A stretch of DNA of 64,000 nucleotides from Saccostrea cucullata (lineage: Eukaryota): contig NW_026933222.1 in NCBI RefSeq assembly GCF_032062105.1, positions 124,001 to 188,000 of the forward strand. Reading direction: 5' to 3'. The position numbers were made by a program, and so were the translations under genes. The notes beneath the pieces are model-generated. The model searched no databases. It was given only the letters and a program-made list of their open reading frames with translations, and had not been told where the DNA came from. Shown one piece after another: positions 13,301 to 49,690 of this stretch (position 1 is its first letter; every line of letters starts with the position of its first letter).

Positions 13301-16300
13301 CCACTTTCTCTTTACTTTTGCACTTTTAAATCTTCAGTCTAATATGTTCACGTTATCATGCGTCTTTGAATTTGAAGAACACGTTATTTCTAAGTTACCT
13401 GTCTTCCTATTTCCAGGTAAAAGACTTGGTGCGACAGCGAGTAAGAATTGTATCCTGGTGACGTCATAAAATTCCAACATTCGTCTGATATTCTGCAGTG
13501 CTCTTTTGATTTCTTTCTAAAATGCAGAAAAAAGTGAAAAAGTTATATTTGACACCTAAAAGCTTTTATAATTAAACAGGGAAACTATTTTGTGACACTT
13601 TAATAGATTTTGACGACAATTTAATTGGTAGATGGCTTCAATTATCGGAAGCAATCAGCGAATCCAGATTTTATGTTTTGCGGCTTTGGGACGAATTGGC
13701 GACGAAAGCATTTTTAAAAGGATTATGGGTAAACCCTTATTCTGATCCCAAAACGTTTCTCGAATGCCCAAACAGGATAGCATTGACACGCATTTTGTTA
13801 TCGCGGATCCCTTGATTTCATTTTATGACCACGAAGGCTGATTTCATTAGCACAAAGAAGCAATACCATAAAAATTAATTGACTTAACGGAAACAGAAAC
13901 TTTGCTCATAAAATCACAACACTTCACCAATCACAAAGCAAGGTAATGGGTCTGCATGCTTAAAAGTAAAAAAATAATCAACTTTTTGTTAAAATCTTGA
14001 AAACGTTGATCTTTGAAAACACCAAAAGCTGCTAATGCATAATGTTCCTAAAATATACTCTGACTGAAATAGGTTATAGACTTAACAAGATTTCAAATGC
14101 ATTAGAAATATGTTTTGATCAAAGAATTATCATCAATGCCATTAAAAATGCCATTAAAGGCCGAAATGGCTAGAGAAAGCGTCAACTAGCTGTAATCTTT
14201 AAAGTTACAATTTGAGCTTTTTCAAGTTGCAAGTAGATAAAAGAATTTGTCTTCGGATTTTTTTTTATTAACCACCCCGAATATGTTTTGTTTTGCCTTT
14301 CTATAAGAGCAAATGGGATTTTTCTACAGTGGCTAGCATTTTGAGAATTAGATTCCACACAAACTACATGTATCTGTTTTGTTCAAACTAACCCTGTTCC
14401 AAAGAATTCTGCCAGACAATCATCTGACTTTTGTTCCCTTAAGGATTCTCCTTCTCGATATTGCCAAACTTTTACTTCGGGATCAAAATCCCGGCTCGGG
14501 TAGTCCATTTCCCAAAATCCTCCTTGTATAATTGGCCCTATCTCTAAAAAGGAATTAGAACATTATTAACAATGATGTCGACATCAAATTCTCTATGACC
14601 TGAATCCTTAACCCGAGGAGTGGTATCATGTTGTAAATTTTGAATTTACTAGGAGGAGGTAAATGCAAAATTTTTGCATTTACCTCCCTCTAGTAAATTC
14701 AAAATTTACAACATGATGGTGGGGTAACAAATTTGGTAAAAGGGTAACAGATTTATTATTATCATTGTGAAAACAGAGACAATTAAGCAGAATTCAATAT
14801 GTCCATAAGCAAAGAAGAAAAGTTTATTTTATCCATTTTAGCATCGTTATATATATTTTTTTCATTTTTATAAATATTTAACTAAGGTCTTTCTAATGAA
14901 CTTCAAAAATTTGAACGTCATTTCACTCATTTGTCGAAATGCAAGACAGATTTAGAACTCCAAAACTTTGTTATGCGAACAGCATCCGTGTCATGATTAT
15001 ATTTACATAGATTAATATACTGATATATGTTCGTTCAAAGCAGATAATTTAAAAAAAAACATTATTCTAAATACGTTTCGACAGTTTCTAGTGATTTGTT
15101 GAATTTCGAATCATTTTGTTATAAATATGAAATTTGTTATAAGCAAACAAAAACAAGACACGAGCCTTGTTTACGTTATGAAGAACTTGATACAAAGTTC
15201 TGTATCTCGTTTGTTAATCAACAAATGTTGTTCAAATTTTTGTTAATCATTAGATGATGATTGTAAACATTAAAATTGGTTTTCAAAATTCTGTTAAACC
15301 TGTTTTCATGTCCCTATAAGTTCTAGGCATACCGTTATAATATTGTGGAGTAAATGCCGCTATGTAGGGCAGCGCTTCTTCACTGACCAGTCCAGCCACC
15401 TTCTGCAATCTCTCAATCCTCGCAATCGTTGGGTTCCAAATTCTCTTCGCATCATTTTGGGGTCGAGAATTTAACTTTTTGAGGAGAACTTTAAATTGTC
15501 CTGTTTGAGATACAAAAATGAAAAATGCATAATTTTGCTTTATTGTTTACTTGAAATTTTTATAATTCAATCTATGGGTGAAAATTTGTGTTTTTATACT
15601 TTTTCTGAATTTTGAATAAAAAAAATGTCAATAGGACCTTATTCTTCAATATGCAAACGTCTTTCTTCTAAATATAAATTAAAGCCCACATTTACCATTT
15701 AGATGCTGTGATCATTTGTTCAGTAAATGATATTCATATTTAAGGGGGCCGACTATATTTTCCATCGCGCAATATTTCGCGCATCATAGTAAAATGAAGT
15801 GTATTTACTGTTTTAATGCAACTTTTTTCGCTTAATTATTAAAATTAAACAAAATTAAGAAATTATAGGTATGAAAATGTAATTACAATTTGATATATTA
15901 ACTGATTTCTTAACCGATTTTGCAATTGATAGGTAGGTTGACGTCGTTGCAGTGTGTTTTTGACGTTATGATAATCTGTACCTCTTAAAGAAAGGGGTAA
16001 TAAAAATATTATTAAAGAAAAAGTAATAAACATTCGTTCTTGAAATTTAAAACATAGAAATTTGAGAATATCTCCAATATTTTTATTATGTTTTCATGTG
16101 AATCCATTGTGTACGTCATATTTTGTAATATTCTATAAAAATAGTAAAATTTGCTTATTTTTTGCATTTTGAGATGCTCCCTCTGGTAACAAAACGGTAG
16201 AATTTTGTATGTCTTACATATAATGTACAATATAGTATTACTCATCAAATATTATAGTTTGAACAAAATGTCTATTGTAGTATTTGTACAATTTGCTTTA

Positions 16301-23194: not shown

Positions 23195-24702
23195 TATGCA
23201 ATATACCGCATATAGTTCTTTGACTGTAAATAATCTTAAGGAAGCTAGCGGGTCAACAAATTATTTTTTTATCATAACCACCAGATATAACTTAAATTTT
23301 GGGATATGATATCTTAAGCTGTTAACTATCATTTAACAAAGAAAAATTTCATAAATTTTAGTTTTAAAATTTGATCATTTTATTATATCATTATATGGAG
23401 CTCTTCTTCTAAAGGAAATCAAAATAGTCTAAAAATGGGCACGACCACCCAGCCTCTTGAAACAATCTTAAAAATTGACAGGTATGGAATTACTAGTATA
23501 ACAAACAGAACTTTTCTGCGAAAATTTATTTTGGAAAAGAAAATTCTTTGATTTAAAAAAAAAAAGCATGTTATTCTTATGGTTCGAAACAAAGCATTCA
23601 AAATCATGAGCTGTACCTTGCAGGCACGTATAATCGGAAGGGATCGAGGATTTTTCCTGGTAGCCCAAACATTTTTGTTGCAGCATTGTGAAACATTGTT
23701 TCCCACCCCTGGGCTATGCTAGGGTGGGCTAAAATGGAAAAGGTTGGGGGGAAAGAAAGTTTAATTTTCTTAGATTTTTGTTGCAACGCTTCAAGATAAT
23801 AAAATTAACTGAATTCTTTAAAGAGAATGAAACTAAAAATTTAAAAATAAAAGCAATCAGAAGATAGGGCTGGTACTAGATTTACTTACGACAGCGTCTA
23901 ATTAAGTGATTGATCCTCCTGTATCGTTACTTTTGTCGTATCAAAGAAAATAGTTCTATCCGGTGCTTTGCATGACGACATACATTGAGCGAAAGAGCGC
24001 GCATTAAATCAGTCATTAGTCAGTAAAAAACAATAAAAACATTCTAATAAAACGTCTTTTATCTTAATGTCATAAACGAGAACTTTATAAAATTTCAACG
24101 GAAGAGCGTGCTGCAATGTTAGGCATAGCCCATCATAAACGACACCTCAACGTTAAATGAAATAGGAATGGTTTCACCAACAAGGCAGCAGCTCTACTTC
24201 TCTCTGTGTCTCCGCAAAGCTTAAAGTTTGAAGGAGGTGGCAAAAAGATTTCTGTTTATTCCAATAGTAGGCATAATAGTCTTGTCGAAATGCATATATT
24301 TAGTCGAAAACAATGTTGGAGGCTTTGTCTTAATGCAGTAATCTCAGGGTTTTTTTTTTCAGGTAATTGATCATTGCAATAGAAATCTAAATTAGAACAA
24401 CTGAAAATTATACAGAAGATTTCAGTTTCTTGATATGTTGCACCAAAAATATACCATTTGACATACATATTTATAGCCACTCTAAACGTCTATTGCCTTT
24501 GTGTGAAGCTGAAAAAAAAACTTTAAAATTGTTCAAATATTAGAAAAGTTGTGAAAAATGAATTCTCTAGAGTTCAACCTTAAGTAAACATACAAGTACA
24601 CGTTTCGTTACATGTAAAAACATCATAAATGGGCATCATACCCACATAAATGAGTGTTGGCTTGACGCAACCTGCTTATAGTTGACAATTAATATACTAT
24701 TG

Positions 24703-24737
24703 TGACGTCATTCGATATTCAATTGTGACGTCACAAT
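24703..24737 (+). promoter_or_regulatory. Paired CRE (TGACGTCA) sites upstream of orphan ORF copy 1
   Basis: TGACGTCA at 24703 and 24726 (23-bp spacing; second within the 16-bp palindrome ATTGTGACGTCACAAT). The arrangement recurs at 25995, 28400/28423/28451 and 29916/29939. Confidence 0.55.
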
Positions 24738-24823
24738 AAACAAGCAAGAGATCAAGAAGCCGAAAGACGTTTCGTTTCCAGGCTAAGACTTTTTGTATAA
24801 TATTTTAACCAGCCGCGTGAGAT

Positions 24824-25307
24824 ATGGAGAAGAGAACAAATTATAGATCCGCCATAAAGCGGTTGTTTACTTGTAGAACTTACCGTGAGCCCGAGCAAGC
24901 AGAAGAGCAGGAGGACTTCTTTCAGAACAGAGATACCGGCGAGACATTTATCGCCATGGACCCCAGACCTAAGAAAGGGTTCTCACATCAACTTAGACAA
25001 TTTCAAGACTTCTTAAGACGTGTGTTTCACATTGAGAGGAAAATGAAGATTTTGAAGAGACCTTCTTCAGAAACAGCCAAACCAGCAATACTGCTGTAGG
25101 GACGAACCAGAAATTGAACGCTTTGCTGTTAAATCACAGCTTCCATGCCATGTGATGCCGAGCAGAGGAAACAAATCTTTGTCAAAGACCTTTCCCGAAG
25201 CACAAATCAAGAGTGATTTAAAGATATGCGTTCTCCAGGTTCCAGAGGAAAATGGTCTTGTAACGGAACAAGATGATATGGACAAAGAGGATGTCATTTA
25301 TCTGTAG
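24824..25307 (+). pseudogene. Orphan tandem gene copy 1, disrupted
   Basis: Near-identical to 28552-29124 but with a 6-bp deletion and a 65-bp deletion creating TAG at 25097-25099 and a frameshift. Confidence 0.7.
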
Positions 25308-26118
25308 AATGGAACAGAATCATGAGAATCATGATCAAATTTTCATATCTAAGACAGTGAAAAAAGAAAATATTTGTGTTCACTTTCGTCAGATATAAGA
25401 TTGACTAAAAAGGTTATGTATTTTGCTAACATTCAAGAGCAGTCATGTAGATGATTTTAAACGTAATACCGGTATACCAAAGTTTTCTTTCAACGAAAAT
25501 CTTGTATTTTAAGAGTCATTAATCATTACAAGTGTACTAATCTGTTACCCGATAATGTGAGAAAATTTTCAGAAATTATGCAATAAACACATTATTGAAA
25601 GATATCGTCTTTGTGTTTGTAGTATTGCAAACGGTAAAGAATCATGAAACGTTTCTACTTATTCCAAATGAATTCTACGCATGGTCTTTCATAAATTTTT
25701 GATGAAACACACAAATTTAAACGTTTTGAGAAAAAGGAGGGGGAGGGGGGGACTACAAAAGAGTTTAAGACTAGGACGAAAAACTTAGGTTGATTGTGAA
25801 ATTTTGTACAATCAATCATTCTTCTGAAAATTAGTACCATAACATAAATATCTTATTCTATTTTGTATGAATAAAAAATATTTAGACAATTTTCAAATTA
25901 ATGTAAAATAAAAGTCAAAAGCAAAATGAAAATTTGTTCGTTCTTTTGTAAAACGGGCTCCTGGTTTTATAGTTCATGACTGTTAAGTCCATTGTGACGT
26001 CATTCGACATTCAATTGTGAAGTCACAATAACCCTACTATAGATCTTTAAGAAGCCGAAAGACGTTTCGTTTCCAGGCTAAGACTTTTTGTATAATATTT
26101 TAACCAGCCGCGTGAGAT

Positions 26119-26530
26119 ATGGAGAAGAGAACAAATTATAGATCCGCCATAAAGCGGTTGTTTACTTGTAGAACTTACCGTGAGCCCGAGCAAGCAGAAG
26201 AGCAGGAGGACTTCTTTCAGAACAGAGATACCGGCGAGATATTTATCGCCATGGACCCCAGACCTAAGAAAGGGTTCTCACATCAACTTTAAACATCTTC
26301 ACCTTGCAGTAATGTTTGGAAGGGATGAACCAGAAATAGAACGCTTTGCTGTTAAATCACAGCTTCCATCCCATGTGATGCCGAGCAGAGGAAACAAATC
26401 TTTGTCAAAGACCTTTCCCGAAGCACAAATCAAGAGTGATTTGAAGAAATGCGTTCTCCAGGTTCAAGAGGAAAATGGTCTTGTAACGGAACAAGATGAT
26501 ATGGACAAAGAGGATGTCATTTATCTTTAG
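26119..26530 (+). pseudogene. Orphan tandem gene copy 2, disrupted
   Basis: ATG at 26119. A 143-bp deletion between AACTT microhomologies (relative to copy 3) shifts the frame. Second CRE mutated to TGAAGTCA. Confidence 0.7.
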
Positions 26531-27173
26531 AAATGAACAGATTCATAATCAAATTTTCATATCTAAGACAGTGAAAAAAGAAAATATTTATGTTCAATTA
26601 CGTGAGATACAAGATTAACTGGATAGTTTATGTATTTTGCTACAACATTCAAGTGCAGTCATGCAAATGATTTTAAACATAATATACCACATTTTCTTTC
26701 AATGAAAATCTTGTATTTTAAGACTCATTAATCATTACAAGTGTTCTAATCTGTTACCCGATAATGTGAGAAAATTTTCAGAAAATAAGTAATAAACACA
26801 TTATTGAAAGATATCGTCTTCGTATTTGTAGTATTGCAAAAGGTAAAGAAACATGAAACGTTTCTAATTATTCCAAATGAATTCTACGCATGGTCTTTCA
26901 TAAATTTTCGATGAAACACACAAACTTATTGAGCAATAGGAGGGGGGGGGGGGTTACAAAAGAGTTTAAGACTAGGACGAAAAACTTAGGTTGATTGTGA
27001 AATTTTGTAAAATCAATCATTCCTCTTAAAATTGGTACCGGAATATAAATTATTCAATTTTGTATGAAAAAATATTTAAACAATTTTTAAATTAATGTAA
27101 AATAAAAGTTAAAAGCAAAATGAAATTTTGGTTTTAGGTGAAAGTTCTTTTATAAACGGGCTCCTGGTTTTAT

Positions 27174-28371
27174 GGGGGGACCTATGTCCAAAAAGTCTTT
27201 GTGTGAAATTTTTAAAACTTTCACATTTCTTTCCTGACCACTTGATCTTAATTTTTAGGTATTAAAAACAATACCTTTATATGCTTATTTTTACACGGGA
27301 TCACGTGCAAAAACAGTGTGAAATGCTAAAAATAGATTATTTTCAGACATTATTGTTGTTCTAATCCAAATATGCGATAAAAAGACCCAAAAATGTCAAA
27401 TCACATTCGAAATCAACATTTATTTAATTTATATGACTTGTATCTTTAAAATGAAGGCAAATTCATTGTAATTCATCTCGCATGAAAAATTATAAAGGAG
27501 CACAATGTGTATCACCCCGTTGTCGTATTTTTTACAATTCCGACATGCATAACAGGTAATATCTTAAAAAGTCTTTGTGTGAAAATGTTGTAATTCATAT
27601 GTTTTGAAAGAAAAGACCCCTCTCTTTATTTTAACAAGGTAAGAAGTGTACCTTTATGATAAAATAAACGAGAAATATGACGTTTTCTTTTATTTTCGTA
27701 CTCTTCTGTCATAAATATTGACCTTTCTGCACTAAAAAAGGGTAAGCTAGCACTGACAAACATATGAATATAAAACTATTTTGCAAAAAACGAGTATTTT
27801 GTTTTGATAAGAAATAATTTAAACAGATATACTCTTTTTTTCTTCATTCTAATCATTCTGCCCCCCCCCCCCCCTTCCACGTCAACAAACAACACCTAAT
27901 AGAACCTAGGAATGACTTTATACAATAAAATCTACATACACTATAAATCAATAAGTAAATATAGGTACAAGTACATTTCTTATTTTTTTTTTCTTATTTT
28001 TATCCAGAAAATACAATTAATGGTAATAATAAAATTAAACATATTTCCCGAATTTTAGCAGCTGTCTTTGCTGAATTTCATCTTATATTTTTTGCATTTT
28101 TATATCAGCATATCATAGAGGTATTTCTTCACAACTGAAATTGCTATGAATTATCAACCAAAGGAATTCTGATATTAACAAACTCCATAAATCAAATAAA
28201 ACTGTTTTAAATGATGAAATTTTTTTCTTTTTGTAAACTGTTTACGTTTTTGATTAATAACAATGTTATGCTTGTAATCACAGTTGCAAAAGTCAGCGGG
28301 AAAAAAAACAAACGTCGCTATTGTGACGTCACATAACGCTGCTTTGACGTCGAACGACATAGGTCCCCCCC
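27174..28371. mobile_element. 1.2-kb non-autonomous DNA transposon with 4-bp TSD (Kolobok-like)
   Basis: TIRs GGGGGGACCTATGTC / GACATAGGTCCCCCC; TSD TTAT. The empty site CTGGTTTTATAGTTCATG is visible in the paralogous unit at ~25961. Confidence 0.85.
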
Positions 28372-28551
28372 TTATAGTTCATGACTGTTGAGTCCTTTGT
28401 GACGTCATTCGATATTCAATTGTGACGTCATTCCATTCGATATTCAATTATGACGTCACAATAAACCTGCAAGAGATCTTCAAGAAGCCGAAAGACGTTT
28501 CGTTTCCAGGCTAAGACTTTTTCTATATTATTTTAACCAGCCGCGTGAGAT

Positions 28552-29124
28552 ATGGAGAAGAGAACAAATTATAGATCCGCCATAAAGCGGTTGTTTACTT
28601 GCAGAACTTACCGTGAGCCCGAGCAAGCAAAAGAGCAGGAGGACTTCTTTCAGAACAGAGATACCGGCGAGACATTTATCGCCATGGACCCCAGACCTAA
28701 GAAAGGGTTCTCACATCAACTTAGACAACTTCAAGACTTCTTAAGACGTGTGTTTCACATTGAGAGGAAAATGAAGATTTTGAAGAGACCTTCTTCAGAG
28801 TTAGAAACAGCCAAACCAGCAATACTGCTGTATGCCGCCAATCCATTGGTTAGGAACCCTAACTTTAAACATCTTCACCATGCAATAATGTTTGGAAGGG
28901 ACGAAGCAGAAATAGAACGCTTTGCTGTTAAATCTCAGCTTCCATCCCATGTGATGCCGAGCAGAGGAAACAAATCTTTGTCAAAGACCTTTCCCGAAGC
29001 ACAAATCAAGAGTGATTTAAAGATATGCGTTCTCCATGTTCCAGAGGAAATTGATCTTGTAACGGAACAAGATGATGTAGACAAAGAGGATGTCATCTAC
29101 CTTCAGAATAGAACAGAATCATGA
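28552..29124 (+). CDS. Uncharacterised intronless 190-aa protein, tandem copy 3 (intact; ancestral TAG changed to CAG adds 6 aa)
   Basis: Long ATG-initiated ORF in AT-rich DNA, three upstream CREs, AATAAA ~240 nt downstream; no domain I recognise. Confidence 0.65.
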   Translation: MEKRTNYRSAIKRLFTCRTYREPEQAKEQEDFFQNRDTGETFIAMDPRPKKGFSHQLRQLQDFLRRVFHIERKMKILKRPSSELETAKPAILLYAANPLVRNPNFKHLHHAIMFGRDEAEIERFAVKSQLPSHVMPSRGNKSLSKTFPEAQIKSDLKICVLHVPEEIDLVTEQDDVDKEDVIYLQNRTES

Positions 29125-29755
29125 TCAAATTTTCATATCTAAGACAGTGAAAAAAGAAAATAATTGTGTTCATTTAGTCAGATATAAGATTGACTAAAAA
29201 AGGTTATGTATTTTGCTAACATTCAAGTGCAGTCATGTAGATGATTTTAAACATAATATACCACAATTTTCTTTCAAATGAAAACCATGTATTTTAAGAG
29301 TCATTAATCATTACAAGTGTACTAATCTGTTACCCGATAATGTGAGAAAATTTTCAGAAATTATGTAATAAACACATTATTGAAAGATATCGTCTTTGTG
29401 TTTGTAGTATTGCAAAAGGTAAAAAAAAACATGAAACGTTTCTACTTATTTCAAATGAATTCTACGCATGGTCTTTCATAAATTTTTAATGAAACACACA
29501 ATACGTTTTGAGAAATGGGGGGGGGGGGGGGTGGTTTACAAAAGAGTTTACGACTAGGACGAAAAACTTAGGTTGATTGTGAAATTTTGTACAATCAATC
29601 ATTCTTCTTAAAATTAGTACCATAACATAAATATCTTATTCTATTTTGTATGAAAAAAAATATTTAGACAATTTCAATTTTCAAATAAATGTAAAATAAA
29701 AGCAAAATGAAAATTGGTCTTAAGTGAAAGTTCTTTTGTAAAACGGGCTCCTGTT

Positions 29756-29879
29756 CTGGGGGCCATAAAAGTTAGATGAGCTCACTTTTGATCTCAGTCT
29801 CATTTTTCCACTATATTTTCCTTTGGAAAAGGTGAGACTGAGATCAAAAGTGAGCTCGTCTAACATTTATGGCGCCCAG
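29756..29879. mobile_element. Palindromic ~124-bp MITE (PIF/Harbinger-like)
   Basis: Arms CTGGGGGCCATAAAAGTTAGATGAGCTCACTTTTGATCTCAGTCTCA / TGAGACTGAGATCAAAAGTGAGCTCGTCTAACATTTATGGCGCCCAG; absent from the paralogous site at ~25960. Confidence 0.75.
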
Positions 29880-30039
29880 GCCTGGTTTTATAGTTTATGT
29901 CTGTTAAGTCCATTGTGACGTCATTCGATATTCAATTGTGACGTCACAATAAACCTGCAATAGATCTTCAAGAAGCCAAAAGACGTTTCGTTTCTAGGCT
30001 AAGACTTTTTGTATAATATTTTAACCAGCCGCGTGAGAT

Positions 30040-30594
30040 ATGGAGAAGAGAACAAATTATAGATCTGCCATAAAGCGGTTGTTTACTTGCAGAACTTACC
30101 GTGAGCCCGAGCAAGCAAAAGAGCAGGAGGACTTCTTTCAGAACAGAGATACCGGCGAGACATTTATCGCCATGGACCCCAGACCTAAGAAAGGGTTCTC
30201 ACATCAACTTAGACAACTTCAAGACTTCTTAAGACGTGTGTTTCACATTGAGAGGAAAATGAAGATTTTGAAGAGACCTTCTTCAGAGTTAGAAACAGCC
30301 AAACCAGCAATACTGCTGTATGCCGCCAATCCATTGGTTAGGAACCCTAACTTTAAACATCTTCACCATGCAATAATGTTTGGAAGGGATGAACCAGAAA
30401 TAGAACGCTTTGCTGTTAAATCTCAGCTTCCATCCCATCTGATGCCGAGCAAAGGAAACAAATCTTTGTCAAAGACATTTCCCGAAGCACAAATCAAGAG
30501 TGATTTAAAGATATGCGTTCTCCATGTTCCAGAGGAAAATGATCTTGTAACGGAACAAGATGATGTAGACAAAGATGATGTCATCTACCTTTAG
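30040..30594 (+). CDS. Uncharacterised intronless 184-aa protein, tandem copy 4 (intact)
   Basis: About 98% identical to copy 3; paired CREs upstream; AATAAA at ~30878. Confidence 0.65.
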   Translation: MEKRTNYRSAIKRLFTCRTYREPEQAKEQEDFFQNRDTGETFIAMDPRPKKGFSHQLRQLQDFLRRVFHIERKMKILKRPSSELETAKPAILLYAANPLVRNPNFKHLHHAIMFGRDEPEIERFAVKSQLPSHLMPSKGNKSLSKTFPEAQIKSDLKICVLHVPEENDLVTEQDDVDKDDVIYL

Positions 30595-31448
30595 AATGGA
30601 ACAGACTCGTATTAAAAGAATCTTATTTTTTCAATGACGTTAGAGAAAGAAAATACAGTACCTGTTCCTATGCACCTACATCAGATATCAGATTGACCAT
30701 AAAATTCGCTTCTGTATTTTGCAAAAATATTAAGGTATTCGTATATGTTATTTTAAACATAATAGATGGCACAAGTTTTCTGTCAAGGAAAATGGTGCTT
30801 AAAAAATCAAATTAAAGACTTCGTGTACTAAATTGCAAACTGATAATGTAAAGATTTTTTTCTCTCAGAAATTGTATAATAAACACATTATTAAAAGATA
30901 TAGCACGAGTGTTTGTATTTTTCTTAGTATTGCAAAAGGCAAAGAAAGGTAAAAGAAACATGAAACGTTTTGAATTACAAATAAATTATACATATGCATG
31001 GTCTCTTTTAAACTTATAATGAATCTGAGAAATACCTTTTTGTTATTCCCAGCAAAAATTCTATATTCAATTGATTTTTTAGTTCTCATATATATTTCAG
31101 CATAATAAGATTAACTGCCTAGAAGCTTCAACATATAAAAGTTGTATAACATATATGTAGGCTAATTAAAAGAATTCACAGAAATGAGGGGAGCTGTTTT
31201 TTGGATATACCAGTATGACAATATGAATTTTAATTATTACATGCAATTGGTATGTATTGACAAGAAATTAAGAAGTTTCTCTTGTGAACTGAATTTTTTT
31301 TTTCGTATTCATAGAAGACTAACACAATCACCAATTATTTTAATTCAATTTATTTTACAGTATTAACAAAAACAAATGAAAACAAATATAAAAAAGATTC
31401 AACAATAAATAAGAATTGTCTGAAAACTAAGCGAAACGTCATTTAGAA

Positions 31449-34400
31449 TTAGTAATAAAAGACATTCCAGCAAACAGCGAAGACTGTCCAACCCATGTAA
31501 ACAGCGAACGCAATCCACCACAAGTATTGTTCGTATAGTCTCTGATCAAAGTTCTTCAGCACCAGCAGCCCCACGGTCAGTCCTGCCAGGGACCCCATTA
31601 AGTGGGCAGTGTAACTGACCTGGGGGAGTAAGTCTTTCTCCAGTAGTCTGTCCCATACTGCAAATCCCACGTCAGCACTAGCTACAACAGGTAATATAAT
31701 TGTCGTTTACTCATAAAGTACGTTTCATTAAAGTTTTTCTCTTGCAGTAAATTTATTTGATTTGTAAAGAGTGAGTTATCTGAATATTTTTTCTTGTTTT
31801 GCGTTCTATTAGGCGTATACTGTAGTCAAAAGTTTGGGGGAGTCGAGGAAAGTTGGTGAAAATTCAAAAATCCTATGATTTAGTTACGAGACTATGAATT
31901 TATTTCTATGGTTATTTCTATAGTTATTTATCTAGTTGATAAAAAAACTTCCAATTTGTTATTGGATATATAATCCTAGAAATGGGTAAAATAAACCATT
32001 CAATTTCAAGCTACAAGCTGACATCGTAATAAAGTTTTGAGTCTTGTAGAAAAACAATTCACTTGTTTCGTTTTGTTTTGTTTTTTTGGTTGTTGTTGTT
32101 GTTTCGCTGATAATCATTCCAATGATATCTCTTTACATTTTAAGATAAAAGTCTTACGCTTTTTATCTAGAGTATATCGATTTACAAATTATAGATTTTT
32201 TGTTCTTGATGAAGCCTAAATATTGGGATTGGAAAGAGGTGGGGGGGCTCGTAGTTCTATTTTTATTTTTCTACAGAAAAAATCATATCTGTAGTGAATT
32301 TATTTTAAAGTGACTGACAACTTTTAGAAAAATACCAGGAAACAGTTCAGAAAAGAAAAAAGTCTTTACCTATAATTAAAACAGCACCAACTTTAACGAG
32401 CCCGAATTCCATTTCAGAGTAATTCTACAATATATAAAAAAAATAATGAAGTCGTAAAATATTAACAGTCTAATTACAACACTTTTTATCAAGGATATTT
32501 TTATAACAAAAACAAATCATATTTTGTATGTTATTATTTTTGTGAAAAACAAGAACATGGCATGTCGATGCAATTTTCCTAACGTGATGAAAATGAAACA
32601 ACTATGAGATTTTCTTGTTAATGAGTTCATTCACAGACCAAACTACACATCAGTAGAGGATACTTGGCAAAGAGTGAATATCATAATAAGTTGTTACAGA
32701 CCAGCATGATGTTAGCCAGATGAGCTGCGAGTAAAGAGTAGACTCCCCCTGAGGCCCCTGCGAGGTACGCCTTCGTATCAAACACAGAGGTACCGAGGGA
32801 CCCTGAAACATAATGCAGACAACGGAAGTGAGGCCAATACAGAGTTATCAATTACATTAATCTACAATGCATTTAAGAAAATCTTTGGAATTGTGTTCCT
32901 TCATGCATTAAGTTTTACTTGATTCACTGTTCGACAATTTGAATGCCAGGGAGTGGAAGCTAGTATTAGTTTATCTTGCAGAAGACGTTCAAATTTTCCC
33001 ATAAAATATCATCATTTTGATTGTGAATTTGTCAAATTATGGTTGTACACGCAAACATTGATTTTTTATAACATTGTTGCTAATTTGCTATCGACATCCT
33101 TACAACATTCCTAACAAAAATCTGCAGTGATATTTATTAACTGTCTCCTAAAACTACAAATCAAGCCAAATTTTAGAAGAACTTGCAAAACTGATCTCAT
33201 TTTTTTTCCACGTTTTATTATGTGGTCGAAAATCATTGAACAAAATTTTTGAAAAAAAGGGGGGGTGTAAAAAAAAAAAGAAGGAAGTGATCAATTACTG
33301 ATGATACCTGCTAAGACTCCTGAAATGTACACTATCATTACTCTTCCTGACCCATGCACCATTTCCAGGGGGAGACCCACGAGAATCTGTACGAGCATGT
33401 TGAAAAATAAGTGGACCCATCTGAAATAAAAAGAAAAAGGATCTAATTCAAAATGAAAATAATAATTATCTTATGTATTTGTCTTCTGTTTATTCTCTAT
33501 TTTTATCTAAAATATTATTTCAAAATGTTTTATTTGACGCTGAATAATTTCTCAGTGGTGCACTTATGTGTCAGGGAAGATGTAAAACTCTATTTTGTCA
33601 AACAAGAGTAAATTGCAGATTCCATAGAATCAATCAATATCACTGAATTTATTTTGTTTTATTTCTTCCCAATTATTCTTAAATCAAATTACATCAAACA
33701 CTACAAGTGTATGACAATGACATTATTAAATATTGCATCTAAAATACATTAACTTAATACTTATACCTTGAAGACTCCTTGTATCAATTTAGCATTTTAC
33801 AAATTACAAAGAATCTTAGTAACAAGGAGTACATATTTTAAATCAAATAATTTTGATGGTGGTTCATTAAATGAGAATTGAATAGCTTTACAATAACTTA
33901 GAAATAATTCAGAATAAATTTGAACAGATAGATAAAAAAAAAAATCAAATTCACTATCTACACCTTCTCCCTAACTATTCAGCTGGATTTGACACAAAAA
34001 TTTTCACGATATAGTCTGGAAATTCAAATTTCTTAAGAAAGAATCGTGAATAAACAGAAGCTGCTAGACGGGCGCAAATTTTTAAGATTAATTAAAGCTG
34101 TTTTTCAAGTGATAAGGTTGAACTTTCTGCTAAGGGTTAAAAAAAATTCAAGAAATATTAAATTCCCTTTGCAAAACGTGTTGACAGAATCTTGTCCCAG
34201 TAGCCCTTGCATTTTTCAGGCTTTTTACCTTCAAATCAATTTATAATTTAATCATTTTATGAAGAGTACCTTCACTGTTTATGAAATCTACAAAACTGAT
34301 AGAAAAGAAAATGAACAATAGAACAGATGACAGATTTGAAAAAAAACCTCAGATATTGAGAAATGAAACAAAAAAATCCACACACATCTTTTATCAATAA

Positions 34401-46084: not shown

Positions 46085-49000
46085 TCATTTTTTGCTCTTT
46101 TTCTTTTTCTTCTTCTTCCTTCCTTTACATATAGTACAAATCAAAATACATGAAATAGAAAAAATAGTCAGACCAAGCCCGCCAAGAGTAATGACTTCCT
46201 TAATTTTTATGTCGTTGTAAGCCTCATGGACGATCACTTTAATGGTCGCCAAATGAAGAGTTGAGCTCCAGCAGTTGTATGGCGCGGTGTCAGTCAAGCG
46301 CAGGCGCCGGATGTGCAGTCTGTTTACAGTATCAATGAACACTCGTCCTCTGGTTTGTCGTTTAATTGTCAGGGGATTTAACACCATTGAGTTATTTTGC
46401 CATCGTATCAGAGCCTTAGAATGCTGACTTTTTGGGCATTTTAGAATAAGGTGTTTGTTTACAGGTTCGAAAAGCACTTTTCGCACGACCATAGGTGGAA
46501 GTGTGGGTGGCTTTCTGAAATACCAAAAACAAATATAAAAACGTAAGGAATAGTTGCTGAAACAAGTAGAACTCGGTCAAAAAGCTTTAAGCGATTCCGT
46601 CTTTAACAACACTTTTAAAAAGGTTTGAGTAAACTGACCTACACCTATCAGGCTGTTTTATTTTATAGCATTTCTTGGCTTTTTTTCCCCTCTTCATCCA
46701 CATTAGCTCTAACTCAACCAGAGTTACAAATACATGTACAATTACTTTGCTGATACTGTCCATTCAAGAAATATTGAAACCAACTGGCTGTTTTCTATAA
46801 TCCCCGAGGTGACTGATTCCATAAATTAACGGATTAAACCTAAATATGCTAGCTAACCTGAGCTGAAGGCTCAAGTGAGTTTTTCTTTTCAAAATTTGTC
46901 CTTTGTCTATCGTTGTCGTAGTTGTTGTTGTCGTTGTCGTCATCGTTCTTGTAAAGTTTCTTCTCAAGAAATTTTGGGCCAGTTTCAAACAAACTTGCCA
47001 CAAAGTGTCTTAAGGAGAAGGGGATTCAAGTTTGTACAAATGAAGGGCCACGCCCTCTTCCTTTTCCTACGGGGGGGGATAATTATGAATTAATGAAAAA
47101 TTGTAAAAAAAAAAAAAAAAATCTTTTAAAAATCTTCTTCTCAAGAACCACTGGGCCAGGAAAGACGAAACTCATGTGGAAGCATCCTCGTGTACTACTG
47201 TAGATTAATTCAAATTTGTTCAAATCCCCGGGGGTAGGGCTACAATATGGTATCAAATTTTAACATAGAAATACATAGGGAAGATCTTTAAAAATCATCT
47301 CAAGAACCACAGGGCTAGGAAAGATGAAACTCACATGAATGCATCCTCATGTAGTATAGATTCAAATATGTTAAAATCATGAGCCCCGGGGGTAGGGTCA
47401 CTAGGGTGGGGCCGCAATGGGGTATCAAAGATTAACATAGGAATACATAGGGAAAATCTTTTTTAAAAACTTCTTTTCAAGAACCACTGCCCTGGACCAG
47501 GAAAGATGAAGCTAATGAGGAAGGGTCATCTGTTTGTGACGATTCAAATTTGTTCAAATCATGTCCCCCTTGGATAGGGTGGGGCCACAATGGGGAATCA
47601 AAATTTAGCATAGGAATTCATAGGAAAAATCTTTGAAAATCTTTTTTCTCAAGAACAGCAAACCCATGATTGGTCATAGTGATATGGAAGCATCCTCTGG
47701 TAGTGTACACTCGTGTTTATTCAAATCATGGCCCACGGGGGTAGGCTGGGGGCGCATTAAGGGATCATTTGGCATAGGAATATATAGGAAAAATCTTCTC
47801 AAGAAGAGCAAAACGATGATTGGTCATAGTTATACAGAAGCATCCTCTGGTAGTGTAGATGTACGTTTGTTCAAAACATGACTCCCGGGGCAAAGGTGGG
47901 CTATAATGTGTGCTCAATGCAGAATTTGCATAGAAAAAATCTTTAAAAATTCTTCTTCTCAAGAACAGCAAAACCATGACTGGTCATAGTTATTTGAAAG
48001 CATTAAAAAAGGTGGTGTAGATTCCATTTCGTTCAAATCATGACCATTGGGGTAGAATGGGGCCAGAATGGGTGAACAAGGTCTTATGTAGGAATACATG
48101 GAGAAAAAAAGTTAAATTCTTCACAAGAACAAAAAAGTTATGATTGATCATCAACAAACATCAAGAAAAGTAATGTAAATTTAAACTTGTTCAAATCATG
48201 ACCAGTTTGGAGAATAGTGGGGCCATTAGAGTGGATCATAACAAGGGAATCCCTCCTCCCCTGAACCCAATTTTATATTTAAACTTTTCAATACTGAATT
48301 GATTTTTGCGTTAACCTAGCCAGCTGCTCAAGTGAAATAAGACTTTTTGCTTATTAGGTAAAATAAAAAATAGTGACTGGTGATACAGGGTGTGTAATAC
48401 AATGCGTGTTCATATCAGGGATGCAAAAATCCTGTAAATAACATATTTCATAAATAACATTATTATTTGAATTCGGGAGTAAAACGCCGCACGTGATGCG
48501 TATATCAGACAAAACAATTTGTATTTGGCCGAGGCCATTATCATAAATTAGTTTAGAAACAAAGTTTTTTATGGCTTACTTGAGTGAGTAAAATCCAGCC
48601 TCTACTGTTTCAATCACTGTACCATTCTCGTCTTTGATGAGAGTGTAACCCGGCGTAGTTGGGCAATTTTTGAAACAGTCTGCCAAACACACCTCGCTAC
48701 GCCTCATTTTGATGCGTTTAACTGAAGCCAGATCTTTAGGCAGCACGGTTGACCGACAAGGCACGCCATTGGGGTAAAGGTCGAGGACTGGAAGGTCATA
48801 AGGCAAAACAGGAAGAGTCTTATCAATTTTGTTGACCATGCATATACCCACCCTCCGTTTAACACTTTTCTTATTGCAGTCTTGGCAGTCAGTCCAATCT
48901 GACCAGGCTGTGAACGTTTTGATGTTGCGATCCTTCAGCCAGTATTCTCCAAGAAACTTGTCTTTTCCCTGTGCAATGTCTTCGTATTTCGTCGTCTTAA

Positions 49001-49562
49001 GCCTTTCCCTGAATAACACATCAAGTTGATAGATTTCCTCATATTCTCTGTAGAAGGTGTTTATGCAAAAATATTGACCTGCATCCAAAACATCCACTGC
49101 ATCAAAGATAAGATCACGAGTACTCTTGTCAATTTTAACTCGTTCATTTTCGTGATCAACGAATACGAAATCTGAGTCCTGGCGTCGTAGTTGTTGCCAG
49201 TCTATTATCTGCAGTTTGGCGAAGTCCTGGTCAGGTCGTGGGCACAGATTGCAGCTGAGTCTCACACTTTGGCCCTCCAATACCAACAACCCCCGAATCG
49301 TGTTCTTTCCTTCGAGTCTTTCTGCCTCTCTCTTCTTTAGACATTTTTCATACTCTTTGAATTCGTCCTCAATCATCTCTTGCCGAGTTTTCTTGCGGTA
49401 TACAACTACATTTCTCTGAACCCTAGAATATCTTGGTTCTCCTTCAAGCCCATTAAGTCCATTAATTTGACGCACTAACTCTTCCAAACCTGGTTCTGTA
49501 AAATGCTTCTCTTTGAATGCATGCGTATTTGATAAAATACCCAGAATTATTAAGAAATGCAT
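46085..49562 (-). CDS. FAM187A: Ig-like domain type-I membrane protein, FAM187A-like, 2 exons, ~470 aa
   Basis: Exons 48580-49562 and 46085-46514 (phase 2, 1413 nt). Signal peptide, Ig-V (LSC..W..DAGQYFC), TSP1-like WSDWTDCQDC..RRVGIC, second Ig (LKC..W..DTAPYNC), TM helix, polybasic tail. The family name comes from architecture recall. Confidence 0.8.
46850..48335 (+). mobile_element. HINE with ~7 Cg170-type satellite units in the FAM187A-like intron
   Basis: AGCTAACCTGAGCTGAAGGCTCAAGTGAG start, (GTC/GTT)n, ~165-bp units TCTCAAGAACCAC..GGGGTAGGGTGGGGCC. Confidence 0.85.
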
Positions 49563-49690
49563 TTCATCATAGATTCGGTGTTTAGTCTGCTAGCATAGCA
49601 GAAATGACGTCATATTGTGTTACGTCATAATGGTTGATCCAAGTCACATGCCCTTGATTCTGATTTACATGTAATACTTTGTTTTTAAAT

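What the first reader, a model, noticed from the sequence alone, without database searches (positions are those of the whole stretch)
24690..31010. Birth-and-death tandem array of an unrecognised intronless gene
Seen: four head-to-tail ~1.3-1.5-kb units (regulatory motifs, ORF, AATAAA-containing 3' region). Copies 3 and 4 are intact (190 and 184 aa); by eye they differ by 5 replacement and 3 silent changes plus a TAG-to-CAG readthrough. Copies 1 and 2 were broken by different deletions (65 bp; 143 bp between AACTT microhomologies). The protein has no domain I recognise: basic amphipathic segments (AIKRLFTC, LQDFLRRVF), a KRPSS PKA-like site and an acidic tail. Inference: a young lineage-specific gene family under rapid copy turnover, as often seen for reproductive or immune genes. 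This is the best candidate for an undescribed system in the window.
Basis: partly seen in the sequence, partly recalled or inferred. Interest (0 to 1): 0.8.

Follow-up and report, generated by a model that had tools for sequence, protein, structure and literature searches.

The report
Oyster-only orphan gene tandem array
Four tandem copies (two intact, two broken) of a small intronless gene found only in oysters; it is a real protein-coding gene of unknown function with a conserved double CRE plus TATA-like promoter, which makes it a modestly interesting orphan family.

Summary
There are four head-to-tail units at 24675-31023. Copies 3 and 4 are intact (190 and 184 aa) and differ by 5 replacement and 3 silent changes plus TAG/CAG. 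Copy 1 is broken by 6-bp and 65-bp deletions, copy 2 by a 143-bp deletion at AACTT.

The family is not a new or young gene. Exhaustive searches find relatives only in oysters, including UniProt K1R1N6 (Magallana gigas, "Uncharacterized protein"), with no Pfam, PDB, viral or literature match. Among Magallana-type members dN/dS is 0.17-0.53, so the gene codes for protein. Synonymous sites are saturated against the window, so the family is old.

Copy 4's 3' flank is only 66-75% identical to copies 1-3, while its promoter and CDS are 94-98% identical. This points to an old duplicate homogenised by gene conversion.

Both lineages keep two bZIP sites 23 bp apart, the proximal one a perfect CRE abutting a TATA-like box. 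RNA-library contigs cover the intact ORFs without splice joints.

AlphaFold predicts disorder apart from one basic amphipathic helix. The PKA-like serine is not conserved, and nothing supports an immune or reproductive role.

My best reading is a CREB/ATF-driven gene for a small disordered regulatory protein.

The parts
24675..25966 (+). Unit 1, a pseudogene. It has two intact CREs (24703-24710, 24726-24733) and an ATG at 24824. The ORF is truncated at 25099 by a 65-bp frameshifting deletion, and there is also a 6-bp in-frame deletion. AATAAA at 25582.
25967..27130 (+). Unit 2, a pseudogene. It has one intact CRE (25995-26002); the proximal site is mutated to TGAAGTCA (26018-26025). ATG at 26119. 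A 143-bp deletion between AACTT microhomologies shifts the frame. AATAAA at 26791.
27131..28371 (.). A 1.24-kb dispersed repeat inserted between units 2 and 3. It is not part of the gene and it explains the 2433-bp spacing. It carries its own TGACGTCA at 28324.
   Evidence: at least 927 first-look candidates; the 40 scored are 88-97% identical and mostly full length; very deep in all three runs
28372..29720 (+). Unit 3, intact. It has three CREs (28400, 28423, 28451; a 28-bp internal duplication) followed by a CAATAAA TATA-like box. CDS 28552-29124 (190 aa; CAG in place of the TAG stop adds 6 residues). AATAAA at 29367.
   Evidence: RNA-library contigs lie on 28455-29050
29756..29879 (.). A palindromic MITE-like dispersed repeat inserted between units 3 and 4. 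It is not part of the gene.
   Evidence: self inverted match; at least 1360 first-look candidates
29888..31023 (+). Unit 4, intact. It has two CREs (29916-29923, 29939-29946) and a CAATAAA box. CDS 30040-30594 (184 aa). AATAAA at 30878-30883. The 3' flank is an old, diverged version (66-75% identity to units 1-3).
   Evidence: RNA-library contigs lie on 30199-30885

Best explanation
The array is the window species' set of copies of an oyster-restricted orphan protein family whose only database entry is K1R1N6 of Magallana gigas. Each unit is a self-contained intronless gene of about 1 kb: a compact promoter, a short 5' UTR, a 184-190-codon ORF and a 3' UTR of about 270-300 nt ending at a conserved AATAAA block.

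Shown: the gene is protein-coding and under purifying selection. It is unique to this locus. Two copies are dead through independent deletions. The promoter and CDS of the copies have been homogenised by gene conversion or unequal crossover on top of an old duplication. RNA libraries contain unspliced contigs of the intact ORFs.

Inferred from a phylogenetic footprint: transcription is driven by CREB/ATF-type bZIP factors. They would bind two sites spaced 23 bp apart, the proximal one a perfect TGACGTCA directly abutting a TATA-like box. In vertebrates that layout is typical of strongly cAMP- or stress-inducible genes (background knowledge, not tested here).

Inferred more weakly: the product is a small, basic (pI 9), largely disordered cytosolic or nuclear protein that acts by binding partners, not by catalysis. 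Binding would go through a conserved N-terminal module of about 80 residues containing a strongly amphipathic basic helix (residues 53-77, fitting a 1-8-14 calmodulin-binding-type pattern) and a short acidic C-terminal motif (PEE.DL ... I.L).
For: Family and restriction: phmmer against 1.84 billion representatives gave only 2 hits (5.5e-12 and 2.5e-9). One cluster holds K1R1N6_MAGGI plus 55 Logan variants. The profile search gave 11 clusters of 121-176 aa, none with a Pfam hit or a name. There were no viral, PDB, Pfam or atlas relatives.

Coding: dN/dS is 0.17-0.53 at dS 0.09-0.50 among intact Magallana-type genes, over both the N-block and the rest (one exception: 1.02 in the L011-L015 N-block, from only 4 silent differences). 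The N-block of copies 3 and 4 has 0 replacements and 1 silent change. Invariant columns cluster in TFI.MD...GF...R...RK.K..K.P.

Single locus.

Expression: contigs from two RNA-seq libraries and a third run only guessed to be RNA lie on 28455-29050 and 30199-30885. There is no cover on the non-repeat spacers 29200-29599 and 31000-31199 or on copy 2, and no joints inside the ORF. The listed ORF differences are 8 replacement to 5 silent, with indels only in the UTRs.

Promoter: TGACGTCA occurs 16 times in the window against 0.69 expected, 8 of them in the units. The cross-lineage alignment keeps TTGTGACGT, then 14 nt, then TGTGACGTCA[C/T]A..AAA, with the same 23-bp start-to-start spacing in both lineages. 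The Magallana-type member with a mutated CRE (L016) is also frame-shifted.

Concerted evolution: CDS identity between copies 3 and 4 is 98.4%, against 66-75% in the 3' flank. Informative sites are (12)(34)=9 in the CDS and (123)(4)=114 in the 3' flank.

Protein: AlphaFold mean pLDDT is 37.7, with a single long helix at 53-77. Hydrophobic moment is 0.77, reached by 0.6% of shuffles. There is no hydrophobic segment (maximum KD19 0.56).
Against: The RNA evidence consists of Logan contigs that are 93-96% identical to the window, so they come from other alleles, individuals or a close relative. Contigs cannot show strand, start, end or expression level, and DNA carry-over cannot be formally excluded. 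One contig starts inside the proximal CRE (28455), and Magallana contigs L009 and L014 start just upstream of it, so the transcription start could lie upstream of the CRE. The Magallana contigs look genomic and say nothing about expression. CRE-plus-TATA composites also occur elsewhere in the window (13459, 23056, 49605), so this promoter type is not specific to the gene. Inducibility is untested. The calmodulin-type pattern is only a pattern match. The C-terminal half differs greatly between lineages (dN about 1.2). Half of the copies here are dead, and the non-N-block part of copies 3 and 4 shows 5 replacements to 2 silent changes.
Confidence: 0.6

Rival explanations
1. The locus is dying in this species. 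All four copies are functionless or heading that way, and transcription of copies 3 and 4 is residual.
For: Two of the four copies are already broken by independent deletions. The stop codon differs between copies 3 and 4, and outside the N-block they differ by 5 replacements to 2 silent changes (dN/dS 0.67). Frame-shifted relatives also exist in the Magallana lineage.
Against: Both ORFs are intact over 184-190 codons, and the N-block has no replacements. The expressed contigs carry no stops or frameshifts in the ORF. The promoter sites and the AATAAA block are kept in copies 3 and 4. The family is under clear purifying selection in the sister lineage.
Confidence: 0.1
2. This is the first reader's view: a fast-turnover immune or reproductive effector family under diversifying selection.
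For: The family shows tandem copy turnover and is lineage-restricted.
Against: No comparison gives dN/dS clearly above 1. There is no signal peptide or transmembrane segment, so a secreted effector is unlikely. The ISRE-like element is absent from the Magallana-type upstream regions, where only the bZIP sites are conserved. No tissue or challenge data were available.
Confidence: 0.15
3. The ORF is a fragment of a transposable element or of a virus-derived gene.
For: The gene is intronless and compact, with its own promoter and poly(A) signal. It is flanked by two dispersed repeats.
Against: The protein matches only this locus in the 1.17-Gb genome. No relative was found in 2.9 million viral contigs or in any non-oyster protein among 1.84 billion representatives. 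The repeats are later insertions between units, not part of them.
Confidence: 0.03
4. The ORF is the terminal coding exon of a larger spliced gene.
For: A pyrimidine-rich stretch followed by CAG lies about 15 nt before the ATG in the window's units.
Against: An in-frame TGA sits two codons before the ATG in all copies. RNA-library contigs run colinear with the genome from 28455, 28476 or 28487 through that CAG into the ORF, with no joint reported inside the ORFs. The pyrimidine/CAG stretch is absent in the Magallana-type genes. Each unit carries its own conserved promoter footprint.
Confidence: 0.03

Closest known systems
UniProt K1R1N6_MAGGI (Magallana gigas 'Uncharacterized protein', 153 aa) and its unnamed relatives assembled from SRA runs
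   Same: The N-terminal block is homologous (about 49% identity over residues 9-87; invariant TFI.MD, GF, RK.K..K.P). There is a similar acidic C-terminal PEE.DL...I.L motif. Both are small, have a single-exon ORF, and share the double bZIP site with 23-bp spacing plus a TATA-like box. Frame-shifted paralogues occur there as well.
   Different: The window proteins are 30-40 residues longer. Their middle and C-terminal parts are essentially unalignable (dN about 1.2). They have one Cys where the Magallana type has Cys-Cys. Their distal promoter site is a full CRE and not TGACGTTG. Neighbouring genes on the available contigs show no synteny.
Vertebrate CRE-plus-TATA, cAMP-inducible genes, many of them intronless or compact (background knowledge, not tested here)
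   Same: Perfect palindromic TGACGTCA sites lie within about 100 bp of the ATG, the proximal one abutting a TATA-like box. The gene is compact and intronless.
   Different: There is no protein homology to any known CREB target. Inducibility is untested. The start site is unmapped and could lie upstream of the CRE.
Small disordered, basic signalling regulators such as PP1 inhibitor-1/DARPP-32 or calmodulin-binding IQ/1-8-14 proteins (resemblance recalled from memory, a lead only)
   Same: Similar size of about 150-190 aa, predicted disorder, a basic amphipathic helix, an acidic tail and a basophilic-kinase-like site in some members.
   Different: There is no sequence similarity. No conserved RVxF motif is present. 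The candidate phospho-serine is Ala in some members.

Membership tests
K1R1N6-type oyster orphan protein family (unnamed) | Significant sequence similarity over the N-terminal conserved block | tested here: met
   phmmer E = 5.5e-12 and 2.5e-9 against 1.84 billion representatives. The profile search recovered 11 clusters. 13 invariant columns lie in the block.
K1R1N6-type oyster orphan protein family (unnamed) | Single-exon ORF preceded by two bZIP sites 23 bp apart and a TATA-like box | tested here: met
   Window units and L007, L010, L011, L013 and L017 share the module (L014 begins too close to show the distal site).
K1R1N6-type oyster orphan protein family (unnamed) | Orthology supported by conserved gene neighbourhood | tested here: not met
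   ORFs flanking the family genes on L007, L011, L012, L013 and L017 have no counterpart in the window. The contigs are short, so this is weak negative evidence.
CREB/ATF target gene (CRE-TATA promoter class) | Full palindromic CRE TGACGTCA close to a TATA-like box near the gene start | tested here: met
   8 sites lie in the four units against 0.69 expected for the whole window. The proximal site abuts CAATAAA in the window and CATAAA in Magallana.
CREB/ATF target gene (CRE-TATA promoter class) | Conservation of the sites across species | tested here: met
   Alignment A4 shows the core and the spacing invariant across two lineages whose synonymous sites are saturated.
CREB/ATF target gene (CRE-TATA promoter class) | Occupancy by CREB/ATF and induction by cAMP or stress | not testable with these tools
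   This needs ChIP, reporter assays and forskolin or cAMP treatment.
Transposable element | Multiple dispersed copies in the genome | tested here: not met
   All 6 protein matches in the 1.17-Gb genome are the four units themselves.
Birth-and-death multigene family | Tandem duplicates with some copies pseudogenised by independent lesions | tested here: met
   Copies 1 and 2 are broken by different deletions. Frame-shifted relatives exist in the other lineage.
Birth-and-death multigene family | Copies diverge independently, without concerted evolution | tested here: not met
   The promoter and CDS of copy 4 are 94-98% identical to the other copies while its 3' flank is 66-75% identical. The tree differs between the CDS and the flank. 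Gene conversion or unequal crossover is therefore superimposed.
PP1 inhibitor-1 / DARPP-32-like regulators | Conserved RVxF docking motif followed by a conserved PKA phospho-site | tested here: not met
   No conserved [RK].[VI].[FW] motif appears in alignment A3. The Ser aligned to the KRPSS site is Ala in P0003 and P0005. There is no Pfam or PDB similarity.
Calmodulin-binding 1-8-14 basic amphipathic helix | Hydrophobic anchors at positions 1, 8 and 14 in a basic amphipathic helix | tested here: inconclusive
   The anchors are F63/I70/I76 in the window and Y/I/V in the Magallana type. The helix is predicted at 53-77, with hydrophobic moment 0.77, reached by 0.6% of shuffles. This is a pattern match only; binding is untested.

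The most novel reading that the evidence does not exclude
The K1R1N6-type genes could be a previously undescribed, oyster-specific class of immediate-early, CREB/ATF-induced signalling regulators. In this reading they are small disordered proteins whose conserved basic amphipathic helix binds calmodulin, a membrane or a kinase/phosphatase, and they feed back on cAMP/Ca2+ signalling. Their dosage would be tuned by tandem copy gain, loss and gene conversion.
Probability: 0.2. Interest if true: 0.55.

Novelty: new member of a known kind. Interest (0 to 1): 0.35.

Why it matters
Bivalve genomes are full of taxonomically restricted genes with no assigned function. This one is a tractable example. 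It is short, intronless and demonstrably under purifying selection. Its two-site CRE/TATA promoter footprint is conserved across lineages and immediately suggests an experiment (cAMP or stress induction). Its copy number is shaped by both gene loss and gene conversion. If the inducibility and a binding partner were confirmed, it would add a lineage-specific node to oyster cAMP/Ca2+ or stress signalling. If not, it remains one of many orphan tandem families. It also shows that this genome (and possibly other oyster genomes) leaves such genes unannotated, since neither window protein is present in the 15-billion-protein collection.

Tried and rejected
- **Single-sequence word search**: nothing found, not even a self-hit.
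- **Pfam** on the window proteins and on all 15 family members: only noise (DUF3287 at E 0.2; DUF2740 and Herpes_capsid at E 0.03-0.05, one member each).
- **PDB profile search**: no hits at E up to 1.
- **ESM Atlas feature search**: no usable hit.
- **AlphaFold with the 15-sequence alignment**: mean pLDDT 37.7, so I did not run fold search, because matches to such a model are meaningless.
- **Viral-contig scan with the family alignment**: 254 pattern matches, none confirmed.
- **Synteny** through ORFs flanking the Magallana-type genes: no counterpart in the window.
- **Poly(A) tails on the Logan contigs as a sign of transcripts**: none; the contigs include promoter DNA and look genomic.
- **Literature**: zero papers mention K1R1N6, and the oyster orphan-gene and CREB searches returned nothing on this family.
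- **L010 dN/dS values**: discarded, because that locus is frame-shifted.
- **Naming the species**: I ran no further search on this. Apart from its closest relatives being in Magallana gigas, the genome's identity is left open.


Full report
**1. What is in the sequence**

Direct-repeat search and a MAFFT alignment of the units confirm four head-to-tail units on the + strand. They start at about 24675, 25967, 28372 and 29888, and copy 4's homology fades near 31023. A sensitive blastn of one unit against the whole window finds no further relics.

- Copy 3: 28552-29124, 190 aa.
- Copy 4: 30040-30594, 184 aa.
- Copy 1: truncated after 91 codons.
- Copy 2: truncated after 57 codons.

Copies 3 and 4 differ by exactly 5 replacement and 3 silent changes. 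In addition, copy 3 has CAG where copy 4 has its TAG stop, which adds six residues. Copy 1 carries a 6-bp in-frame deletion and a 65-bp frameshifting deletion. Copy 2 carries a 143-bp deletion bounded on both sides by AACTT.

The uneven spacing (1295, 2433, 1488 bp) has a simple cause. Two dispersed repeats were inserted between units after the array formed:
- A 1.24-kb element at 27131-28371, with at least 927 first-look candidates in the genome. The 40 that were scored are 88-97% identical.
- A palindromic MITE-like element at 29756-29879, with at least 1360 candidates.

The region has no N stretches.

**2. It is a single-locus gene, not a repeat or an exon**

A six-frame search of the window's own 1.17-Gb assembly with the 184-aa protein finds only the four units. 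All four copies have an in-frame TGA two codons upstream of the ATG, so the ORF cannot extend upstream.

**3. Relatives**

The word-indexed search found nothing. The exhaustive phmmer search of 1.84 billion representatives found two proteins, at 5.5e-12 and 2.5e-9. One of them represents a cluster of 56 sequences that includes UniProt K1R1N6 of Magallana gigas, "Uncharacterized protein", 153 aa.

A profile search with the first alignment recovered 11 clusters of 121-176 aa. All came from SRA-derived (Logan) assemblies, and none has a Pfam hit or a name. Pfam on all members, a PDB profile search, the ESM Atlas, a scan of viral contigs and a literature search for the accession were all negative.

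Neither window protein is present in the protein collection, so the gene appears unannotated in this species. The family therefore exists in public data but is undescribed and, as far as these searches reach, restricted to oysters. The exact species of the window was not determined.

**4. It codes for protein**

The alignment shows a conserved N-terminal block covering window residues about 9-87, 45-54% identical between lineages. Its invariant residues are concentrated in TFI.MD...GF...R...RK.K..K.P. A Ser-rich or variable middle follows, and then a recurring acidic C-terminal motif (PEE.DL...I.L).

I fetched DNA for eight further members. Among the intact Magallana-type genes, pairwise Nei-Gojobori dN/dS is 0.17-0.53 at dS 0.09-0.50, both in the N-block and in the rest of the protein. 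The one exception is 1.02 for the L011-L015 N-block, which rests on only 4 silent differences. This is clear purifying selection.

Between the window and Magallana, synonymous sites are saturated. N-block dN is about 0.4 and the remainder about 1.2. The split is therefore deep and the family is not young.

Within the window, the N-block of copies 3 and 4 has no replacements and one silent change. The rest of the protein has 5 replacements and 2 silent changes.

Three Magallana-type variants (L010, L016, L017) match the intact protein only across two or three reading frames, so they are frame-shifted. Gene decay therefore recurs in the sister lineage. My dN/dS values for L010 should be ignored for that reason.

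**5. History of the array**

Segment-wise identities show that simple recent duplication is not the whole story. Copy 4 is 94% (5' region) and 95-98% (CDS) identical to the other copies, and its dS to copy 3 is only 0.027. Directly after the stop codon, however, its 3' flank is only 66-75% identical to copies 1-3, which are 87-94% alike among themselves there.

Informative sites group (1,2)(3,4) nine times in the CDS and (1,2,3)(4) 114 times in the 3' flank. Copy 4 is therefore an old paralogue whose promoter and CDS have been homogenised with the others by gene conversion or unequal crossover. Alternatively, copy 3 is a recombinant with a copy-4-like body and a copy-1/2-like tail.

One contig from run X3 (only guessed to be RNA) joins a copy-4-like ORF end to a copy-1-type 3' UTR (record 17). 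This shows that both tail types occur next to intact ORFs in other individuals.

The 58-nt block around AATAAA is better kept in copy 4 (81%) than its surroundings, which suggests constraint on the poly(A) signal.

**6. Expression**

Two are recorded as RNA-seq and the third is only guessed to be RNA.

Laid on 25200-31199, their contigs cover 28455-29050 (copy 3: 5' region and ORF) and 30199-30885 (copy 4: ORF and 3' UTR, ending at the AATAAA). No joint falls inside an ORF. There is no cover on the non-repeat spacers (29200-29599, 31000-31199) or on copy 2. The two inserted repeats are extremely deep.

That pattern argues against uniform DNA carry-over. However, these are assembled contigs, 93-96% identical to the window, so they come from other alleles, individuals or a close relative. 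They cannot give strand, ends or expression level.

The listed ORF differences are 8 replacement and 5 silent, with no stops, and the listed indels fall only in the UTRs.

The Magallana contigs include promoter DNA, lack poly(A) tails and look genomic, so they do not bear on expression.

**7. Promoter**

TGACGTCA occurs 16 times in the window against 0.69 expected. Eight of these lie in the units: two in copy 1, one plus a mutated site in copy 2, three in copy 3 and two in copy 4.

The Magallana-type genes carry the same arrangement. A distal TTGTGACGT (there TGACGTTG) and a proximal TGTGACGTCA sit exactly 23 bp apart, start to start. The proximal site directly abuts an A/T-rich TATA-like box (CATAAA in Magallana, CAATAAA in the window).

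Synonymous sites are saturated between the lineages, so this conservation is a genuine phylogenetic footprint. The member with a mutated CRE (L016) is also frame-shifted, and L015 has lost the module through replacement of its upstream sequence.

From background knowledge of CRE-plus-TATA promoters, I infer regulation by CREB/ATF-type bZIP factors. This is not tested.

Three caveats apply:
- One RNA contig begins inside the proximal CRE, and Magallana contigs L009 and L014 begin just upstream of it, so the start site is unmapped.
- The same CRE/TATA composite occurs elsewhere in the window (13459, 23056, 49605), so it seems to be a common promoter type here.
Its ISRE-like element is invariant in the window's units but absent in Magallana.

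**8. The protein**

AlphaFold with the family alignment gives no confident fold (mean pLDDT 37.7). The only substantial element is a helix at residues 53-77. I therefore did not run structure searches.

The protein is basic overall (pI 9.0), with a basic N-terminal 87 residues (pI 10) and an acidic tail (residues 151-184, pI 4.1). It has no hydrophobic segment that could be a signal peptide or membrane span. The helix is strongly amphipathic, with a hydrophobic moment of 0.77 reached by 0.6% of shuffles.

The helix fits a 1-8-14 calmodulin-binding-type spacing in both lineages, but that is a pattern match only.

The N-terminal Cys (Cys-Cys in Magallana) could be lipidated. This is speculation.

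**9. Verdict**

This is a real, unannotated, oyster-restricted orphan gene in a four-copy array with two dead copies. It is old rather than young, it evolves under purifying selection with gene conversion superimposed on copy loss, and nothing indicates an immune or reproductive role.

The most likely mechanism is a CREB/ATF-driven compact gene encoding a small disordered binding protein. My confidence is about 0.9 for a real coding gene, about 0.55 for CREB/ATF control and about 0.35 for the protein's mode of action.

It is a new member of a known kind, namely lineage-restricted tandem gene families, and it is of modest interest.

Noticed in passing
window 27131-28371: A 1.24-kb non-coding dispersed repeat is inserted between units 2 and 3. 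It has at least 927 first-look candidates in the genome; the 40 scored are 88-97% identical and mostly full length. It is very deep in all three laid runs and carries its own TGACGTCA at 28324. The element family was not identified.
   Followed up: partly
window 29756-29879: A palindromic MITE-like element of about 125 bp (its arms match each other at 83%) has at least 1360 first-look candidates in the genome. It is inserted just upstream of unit 4.
   Followed up: partly
window 9877, 13459, 22787, 23056, 43636, 49605, 55883: Seven further perfect TGACGTCA palindromes lie outside the array (16 in all against 0.69 expected for the window). Several are directly followed by a TATA-like run (TGACGTCATAAAA at 13459 and 23056). 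CRE-plus-TATA appears to be a common promoter type in this genome.
   Followed up: partly
window 48576-49562 (-): A 328-aa single-exon ORF has a weak immunoglobulin-domain hit (PF00047, E 0.0033, below the gathering score). A perfect CRE at 49605 lies 43 nt upstream of its ATG.
   Followed up: no
window 31449-31670 (-): This looks like the terminal coding exon of a rhomboid-like gene (PF01694, E 0.0023, below the gathering score). It is convergent with unit 4, so the two genes' 3' ends face each other within about 400-500 bp.
   Followed up: partly
window 62715-63401 (-): A sodium/calcium exchanger exon (PF01699 Na_Ca_ex, E 4.8e-21).
   Followed up: no
L011:72-656 (+): On a Magallana-type contig, a 194-aa PB1-domain ORF lies about 640 nt upstream of the family gene on the same strand. 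It has no counterpart in the window.
   Followed up: partly
L007:2540-2878 (-): An ORF fragment downstream of the Magallana-type gene on the opposite strand looks like the N-terminal exon of an amino-acid transporter (a resemblance from memory; no Pfam hit). If so, the orphan gene there may be nested in or adjacent to that gene. It has no counterpart in the window.
   Followed up: partly
L010, L016, L017: These Magallana-lineage relatives match the intact protein only across two or three reading frames, so they are frame-shifted. L016 also has a mutated CRE (TGACTTCA). Gene calls in the public collection translate them as if intact (P0002, P0025, P0024).
   Followed up: yes
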